Source of the DNA: Adineta vaga
Lineage: Eukaryota > Animalia > Rotifera
Reading direction: 5' to 3'
Assembly: GCA_021613535.1 (NCBI GenBank)
Contig: CP075496.1
Location: 12,400,001 to 12,464,000, forward strand
Length of the DNA: 64,000 nt
Made by a program: the position numbers and the translations under genes. Below are positions 5,754 to 11,081 of the stretch, in pieces (position 1 is the first letter of the stretch; the number at the start of each line of letters is the position of its first letter). Under the pieces are notes generated by a model. The model was given only the letters and a program-made list of their open reading frames with translations, was not told where the DNA came from and searched no databases.

Positions 5754-8700
5754 ATGACGGAGAGCTTTGCATCATCAGATTATTCTGAAAATCTACAGCT
5801 AGAAACAACATATTCAAATAATAACAACGACAATAATCATAATCAACGAAAACAAAAACGTCGTCCAATGCAAACAAGTTCACAAGACGCTCGATACAGT
5901 CATCGTTCTTATCAACAGCAACAACAACAACAACAACAACAACAGTGGTATCCAGAAAATATGTATTATGATCAATATTATTACAATCCACCACCTTCGC
6001 GTGGTGGATATATGAATCATAATTATTATAATTATCAATCACAACAACCACAACAACAACATCATCATCGACGCGGTCAAAATCGGCATCCAACTTCGTC
6101 AGGACAAATGAATCAACAAGCAAATATTCGTCCATCCAATCATCATTCATTAGGACGATCCACTGGTGAAGTGGAAAATCTTCGTTCGACATTAACCGAA
6201 CAATTATTAGAAAACGTTTATGAATGTATGATATGTATTATCAAAATCAAGTATGTTTCTAGAGGAAGAAAAACGTTTTATTAATTTCATTTCTTTTTCA
6301 GTCGAGACGAAGAAATATGGTCATGCGATATTTGTTATAAAATGTTCCATTTAAATTGTATTAGAAAATGGGCAAATTCCGAAGAGAGTGGTACTGATAA
6401 AAACTGGCGTTGTCCAGGTTGTCAATATTCTTATTCAACAAATCCAAATTATACTTGTTTCTGTCATAAACGTACTAATCCTATTTTTCAACCAGGTGAA
6501 ATTCCTCATTCCTGCGGTGAAAGATGTGAAAAACGATTGAATACAAAGTCAAACGATTGTAATCATCGTTGTTCAGAGTAAAGATTTAGTATAAATTGAA
6601 ATTCGATCTTCTATTTTGCTATTTTCGTTTAGACTTTGCCATCCAGGTCCTTGTCCAACATGCACAACAATGGTTAAACGTTCATGTTTATGTGGACGTG
6701 AATCTCAAACAATTATGTGTAGTTCAAATTCATTAATTAAATGTGAAAATAAATGTGGAAAATTGAAATTATGTCAACATCATCGTTGTGAATTGGTACG
6801 ATTCATTGACTATTTTCATCGCTTTTTTATAATATTAATTTTGGATATTTCTAGGTTTGTCATCCACGAGACTGTGAACCATGTGATCAGTTAATCAAAC
6901 AAATATGTTTATCACATGGAACTGAAAGAGAAGTTTTATGTACAATTGAAACGGGTGATACGAATTTATACACCTGTGGTGAAGTGTGTGGAAAATTACT
7001 TCAATGTGGTCAACATCGATGTACAAAAACATGTCATGATGGATCATGTTCAGATTGTTTGCTATTACCGAAGAATTGTAAAACGTGTGCTTGTGGAAAG
7101 ACAACAATGGATAATGAACAACGAACTTCATGTCTTGATCATGTATGTTTAAAAAAATGAATAAGCCGAATGTGAATTATAAACAGAGATTATTTTTTAT
7201 TTCTAGTTACCAACTTGTGACAAATTATGCGACAAAATTCTATCTTGTGGTCCAACAAATGATCATCATCGATGTTCAGCTCAATGTCATAATGAATCAT
7301 GTCCACCGTGTAATAAAAAATCTATACTTCAATGTCGTTGTGGACAATCTAGTCAATCAACATCATGCGTCGAAGCTATCCAATATGATCCAATAAAAAA
7401 TCCATTTTGTTGTGAACGACGATGTAATCGTAAGAAAATATGTGGAAAGCATCGGTTAGTTATTTCATTTCTGATTTTACATACAAAAACTAACCGTCTA
7501 TTTTCATCTTACAGATGTACTGAAATGTGTTGCGATCGTGATATTCATGTCTGCGAAATCATCTGCGGTAAAACGCTTAATTGTGGCATTCAGTATGTTT
7601 TAATAATGAAATTAAAAAAATTAAAATTAATATATCTATATAATTTCTTCTTATTTTTAGTAAATGTGAAGAATTATGTCATAAAAATCCTTGTCGTAAA
7701 TGTCCAATAAATAGTTATGATGAATTAACTTGTCGCTGTGGTCAAACTGTACTTCAACCACCGATTGAATGTGGTACAAAACCACCCATATGTAATTACA
7801 AATGTGATCGTACACATACTTGTGATCATCCAGTTTATCACAGCTGTCATAATGACGATGAATGTCCACCATGTACACATCTTGTATCAAAAATGTGTGT
7901 TGGTGAACATACATTACGTAATAATGTAAGCTATTGACTTGAATTTTCTTTTTATTTGCATGAAGAGAATTATTTTTTTATGATAGGTTCCTTGTCATTT
8001 AAAAGAAGTCTTATGTGGTCAACCATGTGGCAAACCTCTTCAATGTGGTGTTCATACGTGTCAACGTGCATGTCATTCAGGCCCATGCCAAACAGTTGAT
8101 CAGAAATGTACTCAACGATGTGCTATGAAACGACGTGAATGTGGTCATCCTTGCAATGTTCAATGTCATGGACATGAACCATGTCCTTCGACCACTTGTC
8201 GAGAAGTCGTTAAAGTTCGTTGTCCATGTGGTCGATTATTAAAAGATGTTGTTTGTAATATCAAATCAAATGAATCGAGTGAAAATAAAGATGATGTGAA
8301 TTTAACACAATCACTGGTTCAAGCATTATCTGTCCGAACGATCGATTTATCTCTTGCAAGAAAACAACAACAACAAGTTCAACTACCACAATTGGAATGT
8401 GATGATGAATGTCGTATTATACAAAGAAATAAAGCTTTAGCACAAGCTTTATCGATTAATCCCGAAGAATCACGACAATCAGTAGTTGTTTATACAGATT
8501 TTTTACGTGATTATGCAAAGAGAAATGTAGAATTTGTACAAACTGTTGAACGACAATTTGCTCAACTTGTCGAAGAAACTCAACGTCATCGTGCTTCAAA
8601 ACGATGTCATTCATTTAAACCCATGAAAATTAATGAACGTCATGTTGTTCATGAATTAGGAACATTCTATGGTTTAGAAACACAAGCAATGGATCCTGAA

Positions 8701-8820
8701 CCACATCGCAATGTGACTGCATATGCATCGTATGGTGTATGTAAAATTCCAACGGTTCTATTAAGTGAAACAATACGACGTGAAAAATTGAAAGTACCAC
8801 CTCCTGTTACTTTGATATGA
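5754..8820 (+). CDS. NFX1: NF-X1-type zinc finger protein (RING/PHD, NF-X1 repeats, R3H)
   Basis: YECMIC..FHLNCIRKWA..WRCPGC, repeated CH.GPC NF-X1 fingers, and the R3H motif FKPMKINERHVVHELGTFYGLETQAMDPEPHRNV. Confidence 0.92.
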
Positions 8821-9087
8821 ACAGATATTGAAATATACATATATACGCATAGTTATACGTAGTTTTTTAAATTTCATTTTCGTTCTCTTTTTTTCTGTCT
8901 TTTCTCGCTCCCTTCATATTTCATTAAAATAAAGAAGAGCCTGTCTCAGGGTATCTCTATTGTGTTATCTTATTTTCAATATATCTATATAGAAGAAACA
9001 AGAAGACCAAGTAGTTTTCTCATAAAGATAGATTAATGTTTCTTTTTTCTTTATGTTAGATTATTATTTGTGCAATAAGTCTAAACT

Positions 9088-10105
9088 ATGTATTGTCGTT
9101 CATTACTAATGATTTCTCGATTGCCGCGTGTACATACTTCTCATATTACAAATCAATGTTTAGTCACATCTTGTAATCATCCATCGTTATTCTTTCTTCA
9201 ACAGCAAAATCGTTCCTTAGCAGAAGATACATCTTCTAAAACATCACCCGGTCTTCTACGTCGATTTTTTCGTTGGTATATGAGAAAACCGAAACCAGTC
9301 GAGATTAAACCAGTTAAATCTACACCTTCTGAACCACCACTCACATCAATGCAACGATTAAAACGTTTTCTTGCACTTTCGCCGCCGATTGAACGTCTGT
9401 TTATTCGTTCACGTATTATTGAAGATGAAGATTTAGCACGCTTAATATCAAAAACAGCTGCTGTAACCATCTATGCATTTATTGGTATTACTACACTCGG
9501 TACACTCGGTGTCGATACTAAACCATTATTAGCTGGTATTGGTATAACTGGTTTTACCGTTGGTTTTGCACTAAAAGAAGTAGCAACTAATTTTATCTCA
9601 GGTGTTTTTCTTGTTATTAATAAACCATTTGTACGAGGCTGTCGAATTAAAATTCATGGAGGTGGTGGAGGTATTGAAGGTAAATTTGTTTTCATATCTA
9701 GCTGATTATTTGAATAGTTTCATAATAAAACAAAGGTCTTGTTCATTACATCGATGTTCGATATGTACATCTCAAAACTAATGATCGTAAGTAATAATGA
9801 TGTTGTTATGTAAAGTGAAATGTATCTATTTTTGTTTTCTAGATGGTATTATTATGGTTCCATCAGCAGTTGTGTATACGAATCCATTTACTGTCTTTCC
9901 AGCTGATGATGATGCCAATATCGGCTTTATAGATATGACGAAACCCTCACCTAGTGATCCAACAAAACCGGCGGAACCAATCCCAATTACACCAAAGATT
10001 AGTAGTAATAAGAGTACTGGTGCAAAAGAAGCAAAATTGACAATGAAATTAAGTACAGAACCAGCAGGATCATTTAAAAAAGCACCATTCAAAGAAAAAC
10101 TATAA
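9088..10105 (+). CDS. MscS-family small-conductance mechanosensitive channel with an N-terminal presequence
   Basis: Pore helix signature LGVDTKPLLAGIGITGFTVGFALKEVATNFISGVFLV. Spliced beta domain GIEGLVHYIDVRYVHLKTNDHGIIMVPSAVVYTNP. Introns at 9680-9735 and 9787-9842. Confidence 0.88.
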
Positions 10106-10328: not shown

Positions 10329-11081
10329 TTATTCTTGTGATTCAGGAATAGCAAGACTATCATCACGATCGAATACTGGTCGTCCATCAGATTTTGAACG
10401 ATAATTTTCATTAAAAACAGCATGAGCCCAAGTCAATGTGTCATTAGAAACTTCCATAGCCCAATGTGCTTTACGTGGCTGCACAAGCCAATCGGAATCA
10501 TTGATAAGTAAATCAAGTGCTTGTGCTACTTTATACCAATCGACAAGTAATCGACCATTAATAGGCAATTCAACATTTCGTGAACGAATGAATGATATAA
10601 TAGAAGTTAATGTTGGAAATTTTCGTGTTCCTTTCGTTATAATTTCCACAATTGATTCTGTTGATCGTAAAACTATTAATAAAGCTGTTTTAGTTATTGA
10701 TGTTGATAATGTTACTTGATGAACATCGTCCTTTTTTAATTCAAGCATTCGATTGAATGTTCGTTTTAAATCAAGAAAATTTTCACTTAATTTATCCAAA
10801 TTAAAGTTACCCGTTTTACAAAATAAAAGTTCGTTTTGAAAAGATTGAACATGATCAGCTTGTGATTCAACTGATGTAATTACGATTGCTTCGCGATTAT
10901 CAGTAACTGGAACATTAAATGCATATTGTCGTAATTGTTCGTCTTTTTTCAATTCAGTATTTTGACGAAGTTGTTCAGCTAAGGCAAGAACATGAAACCA
11001 ACGGTTACGAGCAAAATGACTAGATTGTCTGTCCGTTGCTATTGGATGATCGTGATTTGATGATGTGGATACTTCACTCAT
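10329..11081 (-). CDS. Unidentified 250-aa protein with an intronless ORF
   Basis: Long ORF with globular composition and typical codon usage. No family recognised. Confidence 0.75.
   Translation of the reverse strand: MSEVSTSSNHDHPIATDRQSSHFARNRWFHVLALAEQLRQNTELKKDEQLRQYAFNVPVTDNREAIVITSVESQADHVQSFQNELLFCKTGNFNLDKLSENFLDLKRTFNRMLELKKDDVHQVTLSTSITKTALLIVLRSTESIVEIITKGTRKFPTLTSIISFIRSRNVELPINGRLLVDWYKVAQALDLLINDSDWLVQPRKAHWAMEVSNDTLTWAHAVFNENYRSKSDGRPVFDRDDSLAIPESQE

What the first reader, a model, noticed from the sequence alone, without database searches (positions are those of the whole stretch)
9088..10105. Intron-containing MscS channel in an animal, with a mitochondrial-type presequence
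Seen: a clear MscS pore and beta domain, two spliceosomal introns, native flanking gene, and an N-terminus rich in R/S/L with no acidic residue in the first 45 aa. The usual C-terminal alpha/beta cage is replaced by a P/K-rich tail. Known: MscS occurs in prokaryotes, plants, fungi and protists but is generally absent from animals, and Arabidopsis MSL1 is mitochondrial. Inference: a domesticated horizontally acquired osmotic safety valve for mitochondria, which would be useful during desiccation and rehydration.
Basis: partly seen in the sequence, partly recalled or inferred. Interest (0 to 1): 0.85.

Follow-up and report, generated by a model that had tools for sequence, protein, structure and literature searches.

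The report
Spliced mini-MscS channel gene in rotifer
A bdelloid rotifer carries a real, spliced and transcribed gene for a miniature pressure-release (MscS) channel, a family said to be absent from animals; its nearest relatives are in fungus-like microbes, and its N-terminus looks like a mitochondrial import signal, though that is unproven.

Summary
Window 9088-10105 (+) in Adineta vaga (chromosome 4) is a three-exon gene: 9088-9679, 9736-9786 and 9843-10105, with two 56-nt GT..AG introns. RNA-derived contigs from three studies lack both introns; a DNA run keeps them. The 301-aa product equals a public "hypothetical protein". It passes Pfam cut-offs for the MscS TM2/3 helices and beta domain and lacks the alpha/beta cage domain.

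The interpretation needs correcting.
- This is not a truncated bacterial MscS. It is a TcMscS-type miniature MscS: N helix, TM2, TM3 and beta domain. The best sequence and fold match is Trypanosoma cruzi MscS (9bgq). Arabidopsis MSL1 is distant.
- The missing cage is a family trait. Only the P/K-rich tail is bdelloid-specific.
- The nearest relatives are intronless genes of unnamed fungus-like organisms and Mitosporidium daphniae. The only named animals are bdelloids. Transfer from a eukaryote is therefore likely (about 0.85), but the tree cannot exclude ancient vertical descent (AU p 0.52).
- The presequence-like N-terminus is real and recurs across the non-animal relatives. Mitochondrial targeting is plausible (about 0.5), not shown.

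A. vaga has a second, syntenic copy on chromosome 1; the channel core has dN/dS 0.09. The scan noted a mini-MscS on another piece of this genome (s1-505291), probably that copy.

The parts
9058..9087 (+). 5' untranslated leader; in-frame stop TAA at 9082-9084 directly before the start codon
   Evidence: The RNA contig of run X1 begins at 9058. The sequence was read.
9088..9679 (+). Exon 1 (aa 1-197 plus the first base of codon 198): presequence-like region, RRFF motif, linker, N helix, TM2, TM3 and the start of the beta domain
   Evidence: ORF list; Pfam and NCBIfam hits; splice joint at 9679/9736 in three RNA runs; identical to P0001.
9088..9222 (+). aa 1-45, presequence-like: no Asp or Glu, Arg/Ser/Leu/Asn-rich, ending in R42-S-L-A45 (an R-x-[FYL]-[AS] motif)
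   Evidence: First acidic residue at position 46. The motif is kept at residues 41-45 in 10 of 13 bdelloid sequences. pLDDT is below 50, so the region is predicted disordered. dN/dS is 0.38 against the second copy.
9250..9279 (+). aa 55-64, basic-aromatic 'G-x-x-RRFF-x-W' motif; predicted short helix 56-65
   Evidence: Conserved in all bdelloids, and recognisable in Mitosporidium-clade and P0087/P0231-clade relatives (alignment A3). Helix in the model.
9379..9411 (+). aa 98-108, N helix (interfacial helix before TM2)
   Evidence: Aligns to residues 5 onward of the T. cruzi MscS chain. Model helix 98-108 with pLDDT about 90. The role of the N helix is described in PMC12334622.
9427..9504 (+). 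aa 114-139, TM2
   Evidence: Model helix 114-139, pLDDT 94-97; PF21088 match at aa 125-163.
9520..9621 (+). aa 145-178, pore-lining TM3a/TM3b. F156 (9553-9555) and F160 (9565-9567) occupy the positions of E. coli MscS gate residues L105 and L109. F160 aligns with TcMscS gate residue F64.
   Evidence: HMM alignment to 9bgt. F156 and F160 are invariant in the 16-sequence alignment A1; across the 140-sequence alignment A4 only F160 is among the nearly invariant columns. F64 = L109 is stated in PMC8282336.
9680..9735 (+). Intron 1, 56 nt, GT..AG, phase 1 (splits codon G198)
   Evidence: Skipped in RNA contigs of X1, X5 and X6, retained in the DNA-like run X12. Same position in the chromosome-1 copy.
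9736..9786 (+). Exon 2, 51 nt (aa 198-215, beta-domain strands)
   Evidence: joints on both sides; matches P0001.
9787..9842 (+). Intron 2, 56 nt, GT..AG, phase 1 (splits codon H215)
   Evidence: same position in the chromosome-1 copy.
9843..10105 (+). Exon 3: end of the beta domain (to aa 234, nt 9901), then a bdelloid-specific P/K-rich tail (aa 235-301, nt 9902-10102) with conserved 'DMTKP' and 'EPxGSFKK' motifs; stop codon at 10103-10105
   Evidence: PF00924 match spans aa 165-230. Tail motifs are conserved in bdelloids only. Tail dN/dS is 0.29 and its composition is K 11, P 9 of 67.
8125..8820 (+). Upstream neighbour: last exon of an R3H-domain, Cys-rich (NFX1-like) gene; not part of the channel gene
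   Evidence: PF01424 R3H, 3.5e-11.
10329..11081 (-). Downstream convergent neighbour, 250 aa, no Pfam family; syntenic next to the second MscS copy
   Evidence: 59.5% identity at the chromosome-1 locus.

Best explanation
The locus is a functional bdelloid-rotifer gene for a miniature MscS-type mechanosensitive channel of the kind solved for Trypanosoma cruzi (TcMscS).

Each subunit has an interfacial N helix, two short membrane helices (TM2 and pore-lining TM3) and the beta domain. It has no alpha/beta cage and so no side portals. By homology, seven subunits would form a central pore closed by hydrophobic rings (here F156 and F160), with resident lipids possibly contributing. The pore would open when membrane tension rises, letting ions and small osmolytes out.

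The gene belongs to a large, mostly unnamed eukaryotic subfamily. It was most likely taken up by an ancestor of bdelloids from a fungus-like (holomycotan) eukaryote. It then gained two short introns and a P/K-rich tail, and was duplicated with the genome. Both copies are kept under purifying selection.

The 95-residue N-terminal extension begins with a presequence-like stretch that the non-animal relatives also have. The most likely site of action is therefore the mitochondrial inner membrane, with the N helix and beta domain in the matrix, acting as a swelling-release valve.

Shown: gene structure, transcription, family membership, fold, conservation, and the distribution among named organisms.
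Inferred: heptamer, tension gating, direction of transfer, mitochondrial location (about 0.5), and any link to rehydration.
For: Gene model and expression:
- Spliced RNA contigs from three studies.
- The product is identical to the public protein P0001.

Family:
- Pfam PF21088 and PF00924 both score above their cut-offs; PF21082 is absent.
- The best PDB sequence hits are the 174-aa T. cruzi MscS chains (E 1e-26), against E. coli MscS at 1e-16 and AtMSL1 at 1e-6.
- The AlphaFold core, residues 80-235, has pLDDT 88-97.
- The best fold match is 9bgq: TM-score 0.76 over 136 of 137 target residues.
- The gate-position Phe residues and the structural residues P180, G198 and P221 are conserved.
- TcMscS is a proven tension-gated heptamer lacking the cage (PMC8282336, PMC12334622).

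Origin:
- 19,577 relatives at E<=1e-3, and 71 clusters at E<=1e-30, nearly all short proteins.
- Bdelloids form one clade (SH-aLRT 96-98). They group with Mitosporidium daphniae and unnamed intronless genes.
- Those unnamed genes sit in a conserved BUD31-MscS-CCTbeta neighbourhood on contigs whose CCT-beta is 67-70% identical between them. For the one contig searched, the nearest named CCT-beta sequences are fungal, at 71-75%.
- The named animal hits are bdelloids only: Adineta, Rotaria and Didymodactylos.

Selection and age:
- A second copy lies on chromosome 1 with the same intron positions and a syntenic neighbour.
- dN/dS is 0.09 for the core and 0.29-0.43 for the N-terminal and tail regions.

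Targeting:
- The first acidic residue is at 46.
- In 111 non-bdelloid relatives with N-terminal extensions, the median first acidic residue is at 28 and median net charge is +3. In 96 cytosolic CCT-beta controls the figures are 11 and -2.
- The R-x-[FYL]-[SA] motif occurs in 28 of 107 extensions, against 13.8 +/- 3.4 in shuffles (maximum 27 of 500).
- The motif is kept at residues 41-45 in 10 of 13 bdelloid sequences.
- Residues 1-48 are predicted disordered.
Against: - No localisation predictor or experiment was available. The presequence argument rests on home-made composition and motif counts.
- The bdelloid N-terminus has only 3 Arg in 40 residues and is rich in Asn and Gln.
- The one characterised family member, TcMscS, sits in the contractile vacuole complex and plasma membrane, not in mitochondria (PMC8282336).
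- The AU test does not reject a tree in which the fungus-like sequences form a clade that excludes bdelloids (p 0.52). Topology therefore cannot separate transfer from ancient opisthokont descent with loss.
- The named-homolog searches are word-indexed and not exhaustive: 143 hits against 1,892 clusters at E<=1e-10. Absence from other animals is likely but not proven.
- Oligomer prediction gave no verdict.
- The desiccation transcriptome supplement that could be searched lists the rotifer's MscL but not this gene, and the file was cut when stored.
Confidence: 0.7

Rival explanations
1. Same channel, different address. The protein works in the plasma membrane or an osmoregulatory organelle (protonephridia or contractile bladder, or the ER), as TcMscS does in the contractile vacuole complex. 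The N-terminal extension is then a cytosolic regulatory or membrane-binding arm, not an import signal.
For: TcMscS, the closest characterised relative, is in the contractile vacuole complex and plasma membrane (PMC8282336). The conserved basic-aromatic RRFF helix at aa 56-65 could be a second interfacial, lipid-binding helix. The bdelloid N-terminus is only moderately Arg-rich.
Against: TcMscS has no N-terminal extension at all; its N helix starts at residue 1-5. The extension's acid-free, positively charged composition and the R-x-[FYL]-[SA] motif recur across many divergent relatives, and are absent from cytosolic controls. No signal-peptide-like hydrophobic core is seen in residues 1-45.
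Confidence: 0.4
2. The gene was not transferred. It is an old opisthokont gene, shared by the fungal and animal stems, that survived only in bdelloids among sampled animals.
For: The nearest relatives are holomycotan, the sister lineage of animals and their kin. A tree with those sequences as a clade apart from bdelloids is as likely as the free tree (AU p 0.52). The gene predates the split of the two A. vaga genome copies and is present in all three sampled bdelloid genera.
Against: It requires independent loss in every other named animal lineage and in the unicellular relatives of animals; none appeared among named hits. Bdelloids are known for unusually many foreign genes, including fungal ones (PMC3499245, PMC4632278, listed; not read in full here). 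The rotifer introns are not shared with the intronless relatives.
Confidence: 0.12
3. Direct acquisition from a bacterium, followed by loss of TM1 and the cage domain in the rotifer (the implicit first reading).
For: MscS is mainly prokaryotic. Short prokaryotic and viral forms exist. The same genome holds bacterial-type MscL genes, according to an earlier scan note (s1-489433).
Against: Bacterial sequences lie outside a starred (96-97) eukaryote-type clade of 148-171 rows that contains the bdelloids. The truncated architecture, the N helix, the RRFF motif and the presequence-like extension are all shared with eukaryotic relatives.
Confidence: 0.03
4. Contaminant DNA or an assembly artefact rather than a rotifer gene.
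For: None found.
Against: The gene lies in a chromosome-scale contig with rotifer-like composition (GC about 0.30-0.35). It has 56-nt introns removed in RNA and eukaryotic neighbours. A syntenic second copy exists, and orthologs are present in independent assemblies of Adineta, Rotaria and Didymodactylos.
Confidence: 0.01

Closest known systems
Trypanosoma cruzi TcMscS, the 'miniature MscS' (PDB 9bgq, 9bgs, 9bgt, 9bgu; PMC8282336, PMC12334622)
   Same: Same architecture: N helix, TM2, kinked TM3 and beta domain, with no alpha/beta cage. It is the best sequence hit (E 1e-26) and the best fold hit (TM-score 0.76 on the target). The Phe at the main gate position is shared (F160 = F64)..
   Different: The rotifer protein has about 95 extra N-terminal residues (presequence-like stretch, RRFF motif, Pro-rich linker). 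It has a second Phe (F156) where TcMscS has Ala60, a conserved P/K-rich tail and two introns. About 31% identity over the structural alignment. TcMscS is in the contractile vacuole and plasma membrane.
Escherichia coli MscS (2oau, 6rld)
   Same: TM2, TM3 and the beta domain align (E 1e-16). Structural residues P129, G143 and P166 correspond to P180, G198 and P221. Gate positions L105 and L109 are hydrophobic here (F156, F160)..
   Different: No TM1, no periplasmic anchor, no alpha/beta domain, no C-terminal barrel and so no side portals.
Arabidopsis MSL1, the known mitochondrial MscS-like channel (6vxm, 6lyp)
   Same: MscS superfamily. A possible functional analogue if the rotifer protein is mitochondrial.
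   Different: Only a distant relative (E 1e-6). MSL1 has five TM helices and keeps the alpha/beta domain. There is no specific common origin with the rotifer gene.
Mitosporidium daphniae hypothetical proteins KAM0684190.1 and KGG50552.1, and unnamed holomycotan relatives
   Same: Nearest named non-animal relative (49% identity to the rotifer protein in A3). Shares the 'GC-x-[IL]K[IV]HG-x-GGG[IL]EG' beta-domain signature and the upstream basic 'RFF'-type motif.
   Different: Shorter (about 190-250 aa), without the bdelloid tail; the unnamed relatives are intronless as called. None is characterised.
Microsporidian MscS2 (Nematocida displodere; PMC11262690)
   Same: Another extremely compacted eukaryotic MscS that keeps TM3 and the beta domain and still forms a heptamer.
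   Different: Reported as bacterially derived and lacking TM2 as well. Whether it is related to the Mitosporidium gene found here was not tested.

Membership tests
MscS superfamily | Profile match to the TM2/TM3 helices (PF21088) and the beta domain (PF00924) above curated cut-offs | tested here: met
   P0001 scores 28.8 bits (cut-off 23.1) and 33.7 bits (cut-off 20.2). NCBIfam MscS models reach 1e-12 on exon 1.
MscS superfamily | Hydrophobic gate residues on TM3a (E. coli L105/L109) and conserved kink and turn residues (P129, G143, P166) | tested here: met
   F156 and F160 occupy the gate positions. P180, G198 and P221 are invariant or nearly invariant in the 140-sequence alignment.
MscS superfamily | Homo-heptameric assembly | not testable with these tools
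All solved relatives are heptamers.
MscS superfamily | Conductance gated by membrane tension | not testable with these tools
   Needs patch clamp or downshock rescue.
Canonical (E. coli-type) MscS | C-terminal alpha/beta domain (PF21082) forming the cage with side portals, and TM1 | tested here: not met
   No PF21082 hit. The model shows only two long helices before the beta domain and a disordered tail after residue 247.
TcMscS-type miniature MscS | Architecture N helix + TM2 + TM3 + beta domain only | tested here: met
   The HMM alignment covers chain residues 5-159 of 9bgt. Foldseek aligns 136 of 137 target residues, TM-score 0.76. Secondary structure.
TcMscS-type miniature MscS | Closer to TcMscS than to any other solved MscS | tested here: met
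   E 1e-26 against 1e-16 for E. coli MscS and 1e-6 for MSL1. Ranked first by fold.
TcMscS-type miniature MscS | Membrane helices too short to span a flat bilayer; pore plugged by lipids at rest | not testable with these tools
   Described for TcMscS by cryo-EM and MD (PMC12334622); not examined here.
MSL1-type mitochondrial MscS | Specific sequence relationship to plant MSL1 (five TM helices, alpha/beta domain retained) | tested here: not met
   E 1e-6, aligned over TM3 and the beta domain only.
Matrix-targeting presequence | N-terminal 20-50 residues free of acidic residues, net positive, hydroxylated | tested here: met
   First Asp or Glu at residue 46, 3 Arg and no acidic residue in the first 40. 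Cytosolic CCT-beta controls have their first acidic residue at a median of 11.
Matrix-targeting presequence | Processing-site motif R-x-[FYL]-[AS] (R-3 type; named from general knowledge of MPP and Icp55 sites) | tested here: met
   R42-S-L-A45. R-x-L-[AST] is found at residues 41-45 in 10 of 13 bdelloid sequences. The motif is enriched in relatives: 28 of 107 against 13.8 expected.
Matrix-targeting presequence | Positive call by a trained predictor, or experimental import | not testable with these tools
   TargetP, MitoFates and DeepLoc are not available.
Horizontally acquired bdelloid gene | Absent from other animals | tested here: inconclusive
   Named animal hits are bdelloids only. The named searches are not exhaustive, and the exhaustive search carries no names.
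Horizontally acquired bdelloid gene | Nested inside a non-animal clade | tested here: inconclusive
   Bdelloids group with holomycotan sequences at SH-aLRT 90, unstarred. The backbone is a polytomy, and the AU test does not reject bdelloids lying outside (p 0.52).
Horizontally acquired bdelloid gene | Integrated in the host genome: host-type introns, transcription, host neighbours | tested here: met

The most novel reading that the evidence does not exclude
The rotifer gene is one member of an undescribed, eukaryote-wide family of mitochondrial miniature MscS channels. They have a presequence, N helix, TM2, TM3 and beta domain, and no cage. Bdelloids captured one from a fungus-like donor with its import signal still working. 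That would give these animals a mechanosensitive release valve in the mitochondrial inner membrane, something no other animal is known to have, possibly used when mitochondria swell on rehydration.
Probability: 0.4. Interest if true: 0.75.

Novelty: new member of a known kind. Interest (0 to 1): 0.55.

Why it matters
[quoted passage not shown] Here an animal lineage has kept two expressed copies under purifying selection.

It is also the minimal form of the channel, whose gating mechanism is under active study.

If the N-terminal signal is a true mitochondrial presequence, this would point to a widespread, unstudied class of mitochondrial mechanosensitive channels outside plants. It would also show a foreign gene arriving with a ready-made organelle address.

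The surprise is tempered. Bdelloids are known to hold thousands of foreign genes, and automatic databases already tag the orthologs as MscS-domain proteins. No paper found here discusses them.

Tried and rejected
- A six-frame search of the whole genome with PF00924 found nothing, because the beta domain is split by both introns. The protein search then found two loci.
- The language-model atlas search returned only generic short MscS clusters from archaea, bacteria and giant viruses, with no taxonomic help.
- Cluster look-ups gave no names for the nearest unnamed relatives.
- Literature searches for MscS or mechanosensitive channels with rotifer, bdelloid or Adineta found no relevant paper.
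- The careful IQ-TREE run on the reduced set did not finish in the time allowed, so quick trees with SH-aLRT support are reported.
- The AU test could not separate 'nested in' from 'sister to' the fungus-like sequences.
- The homo-oligomer prediction (4 copies of aa 84-250) returned no verdict. It is not evidence either way.
- The supplement of the A. vaga desiccation and radiation transcriptome (PMC10809525) mentions only MscL. The file was cut when stored.
- The 'Nosema granulosis' hit (P0048) was rejected as a second non-rotifer host. It is a 1.2-kb contig carrying the bdelloid-specific N-terminus, and its reading runs on past the exon-1 end, so it is most likely rotifer DNA in that assembly.

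Exons were searched by reference, and dN/dS was computed exon by exon. The full-length product was used only as the public protein P0001, which equals the spliced model.

Full report
**What is there.** The window is part of chromosome-scale contig 4 (12.40-12.46 Mb) of a 100.8-Mb, six-contig genome. The identical public protein is from Adineta vaga.

At 9088-10105 (+) the sequence reads as three exons, 9088-9679, 9736-9786 and 9843-10105, separated by two 56-nt GT..AG introns, both in phase 1. Contigs of three RNA-like runs from three different studies skip exactly 9680-9735 and 9787-9842. A DNA-like run has a contig that runs straight through both. One RNA contig starts at 9058, and an in-frame TAA lies at 9082-9084, so ATG 9088 is the start.

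The spliced product is 301 aa and is identical to the public protein P0001, 'hypothetical protein I4U23_021122'. Exons were searched by reference, and the whole protein was used only as P0001.

**What it is.** Exon 1 alone hits the MscS TM2/3 model and NCBIfam MscS models. P0001 passes the Pfam cut-offs for PF21088 and PF00924 and has no hit to the third, alpha/beta domain PF21082.

A profile of the rotifer proteins and their first relatives was run against all PDB sequences.
- The 174-aa Trypanosoma cruzi MscS chains come first, at E 1e-26.
- E. coli MscS follows at 1e-16.
- Arabidopsis mitochondrial MSL1 scores only 1e-6.

An AlphaFold model built on 140 relatives is confident for residues 80-235 (pLDDT 88-97). 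It shows a short helix at 98-108, long helices at 114-139 and 145-178, a five-stranded beta domain and one more helix at 237-247. Residues 1-48 and the tail after 247 score low. Foldseek ranks T. cruzi MscS first, with TM-score 0.76 over 136 of its 137 residues.

TcMscS is the 'miniature' MscS: an N helix, TM2, TM3 and beta domain, with no cage or side portals. It is nonetheless a heptameric, tension-gated channel (PMC8282336; PMC12334622). The missing cage is therefore a trait of the subfamily, not something replaced in the rotifer.

In the alignment, F160 sits at the TcMscS gate residue F64, which corresponds to E. coli L109. F156 sits at E. coli L105, where TcMscS has Ala. P180, G198 and P221 correspond to the conserved P129, G143 and P166.

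**Relatives and origin.** Close homologs with names come only from bdelloids: Adineta vaga, A. steineri, several Rotaria, and Didymodactylos carnosus. There are also dozens of unnamed metagenome fragments that end where exon 1 ends, which is what bdelloid DNA read by a prokaryotic gene caller would look like.

An exhaustive profile search of 1.84 billion cluster representatives found 19,577 relatives at E<=1e-3 and 71 at E<=1e-30. The best are nearly all short proteins of 150-270 aa in which the match ends near the C-terminus.

In a 210-row tree the bdelloids are one clade (SH-aLRT 96). It lies inside a starred eukaryote-type clade, and bacterial sequences lie outside it. Their nearest neighbours (support 90, not starred) are:
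- a clade holding Mitosporidium daphniae, found in two independent assemblies;
- three groups of unnamed intronless genes.

All of these share a distinctive beta-domain signature (Gly-Cys, then 'K-I-H-G-x-G-G-G-I-E-G'). Most also have a basic-aromatic 'RRFF'-type motif upstream of the N helix.

The unnamed relatives lie on gene-dense eukaryotic contigs. On three of these, whose CCT-beta proteins are only 67-70% identical to one another, the channel gene sits in the same BUD31-MscS-CCTbeta neighbourhood. For the one contig searched, the CCT-beta is nearest to fungi of many phyla, at 71-75% identity. The gene therefore looks native and old in a deep fungus-like (holomycotan) lineage.

The backbone among these groups is a polytomy. 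An AU test does not reject a tree in which the fungus-like sequences form a clade that excludes bdelloids (p 0.52). The case for horizontal transfer therefore rests on two points: no other named animal has the gene, and bdelloids are known to take up foreign genes (PMC3499245, PMC4632278; listed). I put transfer from a eukaryote at about 0.85, ancient vertical descent with massive loss at about 0.12, and a bacterial source at about 0.03.

**Age and selection.** A. vaga has a second copy on contig 1 (P0015, 68% identical in alignment A1). It has introns at the same two positions, and the same 250-aa convergent neighbour at 59.5% identity.

Between the two copies dS is about 1. Exon-by-exon dN/dS values are:

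| Region | dN/dS |
|---|---|
| N helix, TM2, TM3 | 0.09 |
| Residues 1-45 | 0.38 |
| Linker | 0.43 |
| Tail | 0.29 |

Both copies have therefore been kept as coding genes for a long time.

**The N-terminus.** The first acidic residue is E46, and residues 1-40 have three Arg and no Asp or Glu. This is not a rotifer peculiarity.
- Among 111 non-bdelloid cluster representatives with at least 30 residues before the N helix, the median first acidic residue is at 28 and the median net charge of the first 40 residues is +3.
- In 96 cytosolic CCT-beta proteins used as a control, the figures are 11 and -2.
- The R-x-[FYL]-[SA] motif is typical of matrix-peptidase sites, by general knowledge. It occurs in 28 of 107 extensions, against 13.8 +/- 3.4 in composition-preserving shuffles (maximum 27 of 500).
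- Bdelloids keep R-x-L-[AST] at residues 41-45 in 10 of 13 sequences.
- No signal-peptide-like hydrophobic core is present.

This fits a mitochondrial presequence that came with the gene. With two membrane helices, import would put the N helix and beta domain in the matrix.

These are home-made measures. The bdelloid stretch is only moderately Arg-rich, and the one characterised relative works in the contractile vacuole and plasma membrane. I give mitochondrial location about 0.5.

**Most likely mechanism.** By homology, the protein forms a heptameric, cage-less pore. It is closed by two rings of Phe, and possibly by resident lipids as in TcMscS. It opens under membrane tension to release ions and small solutes.
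- Shown: the gene, its expression, the fold and the conservation.
- Inferred: assembly, gating, location, and any role in rehydration.

The conserved bdelloid-only tail motifs and the RRFF helix have no assigned role.

**Novelty.** This is a new member of a known kind: a TcMscS-type miniature MscS, notable for sitting in an animal. The orthologs are already in public databases as uncharacterised or 'MscS domain-containing' proteins, but I found no paper that discusses them.

The scan has an unexamined note of a 'mini-MscS' on another piece of this genome (s1-505291), probably the contig-1 copy. It also has a follow-up on bacterial-type MscL genes in the same genome (s1-489433).

Noticed in passing
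L001 5427-6654; L009 9443-12231; L012 696-6484: On three deeply diverged, unnamed fungus-like contigs the mini-MscS gene lies head-to-head with BUD31 and within a few kb of CCT-beta. This is a conserved micro-synteny across organisms whose CCT-beta is only 67-70% identical.
   Followed up: partly
P0048 ('Nosema granulosis', 1.2-kb contig): A protein filed under a microsporidian carries the bdelloid-specific N-terminus and runs a few codons past the exon-1 end. It is most likely rotifer DNA contaminating that assembly.
   Followed up: partly
P0234 (Didymodactylos carnosus, 422 aa): The public gene model fuses LIM zinc-finger domains to the mini-MscS. It looks like two neighbouring genes merged by the annotator, and it hides the true N-terminus in this early-branching bdelloid.
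   Followed up: no
window 10329-11081 (-): A 250-aa convergent neighbour has no Pfam family but is conserved (59.5%) beside the second MscS copy on contig 1. The RNA contig of run X1 runs on about 790 nt past 10300, so the 3' ends of the two genes probably overlap.
   Followed up: partly
PMC10809525, supplementary file 8: The A. vaga desiccation and radiation transcriptome table lists an MscL gene (FUN_024790) under 'regulation of osmotic pressure changes'. The mini-MscS was not found in the part of the file that is held.
   Followed up: no
deep-search clade of 36 representatives (for example P0125, P0132, P0133, P0135, P0144, P0150): One strongly supported (100) branch of the mini-MscS family starts with signal-peptide-like hydrophobic N-termini instead of presequence-like ones. 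This suggests that different subfamilies go to different membranes.
   Followed up: no
window 8125-8820 (+): The upstream neighbour ends in an R3H domain preceded by Cys/His-rich repeats. It looks like the last exon of an NFX1-type zinc-finger gene.
   Followed up: no
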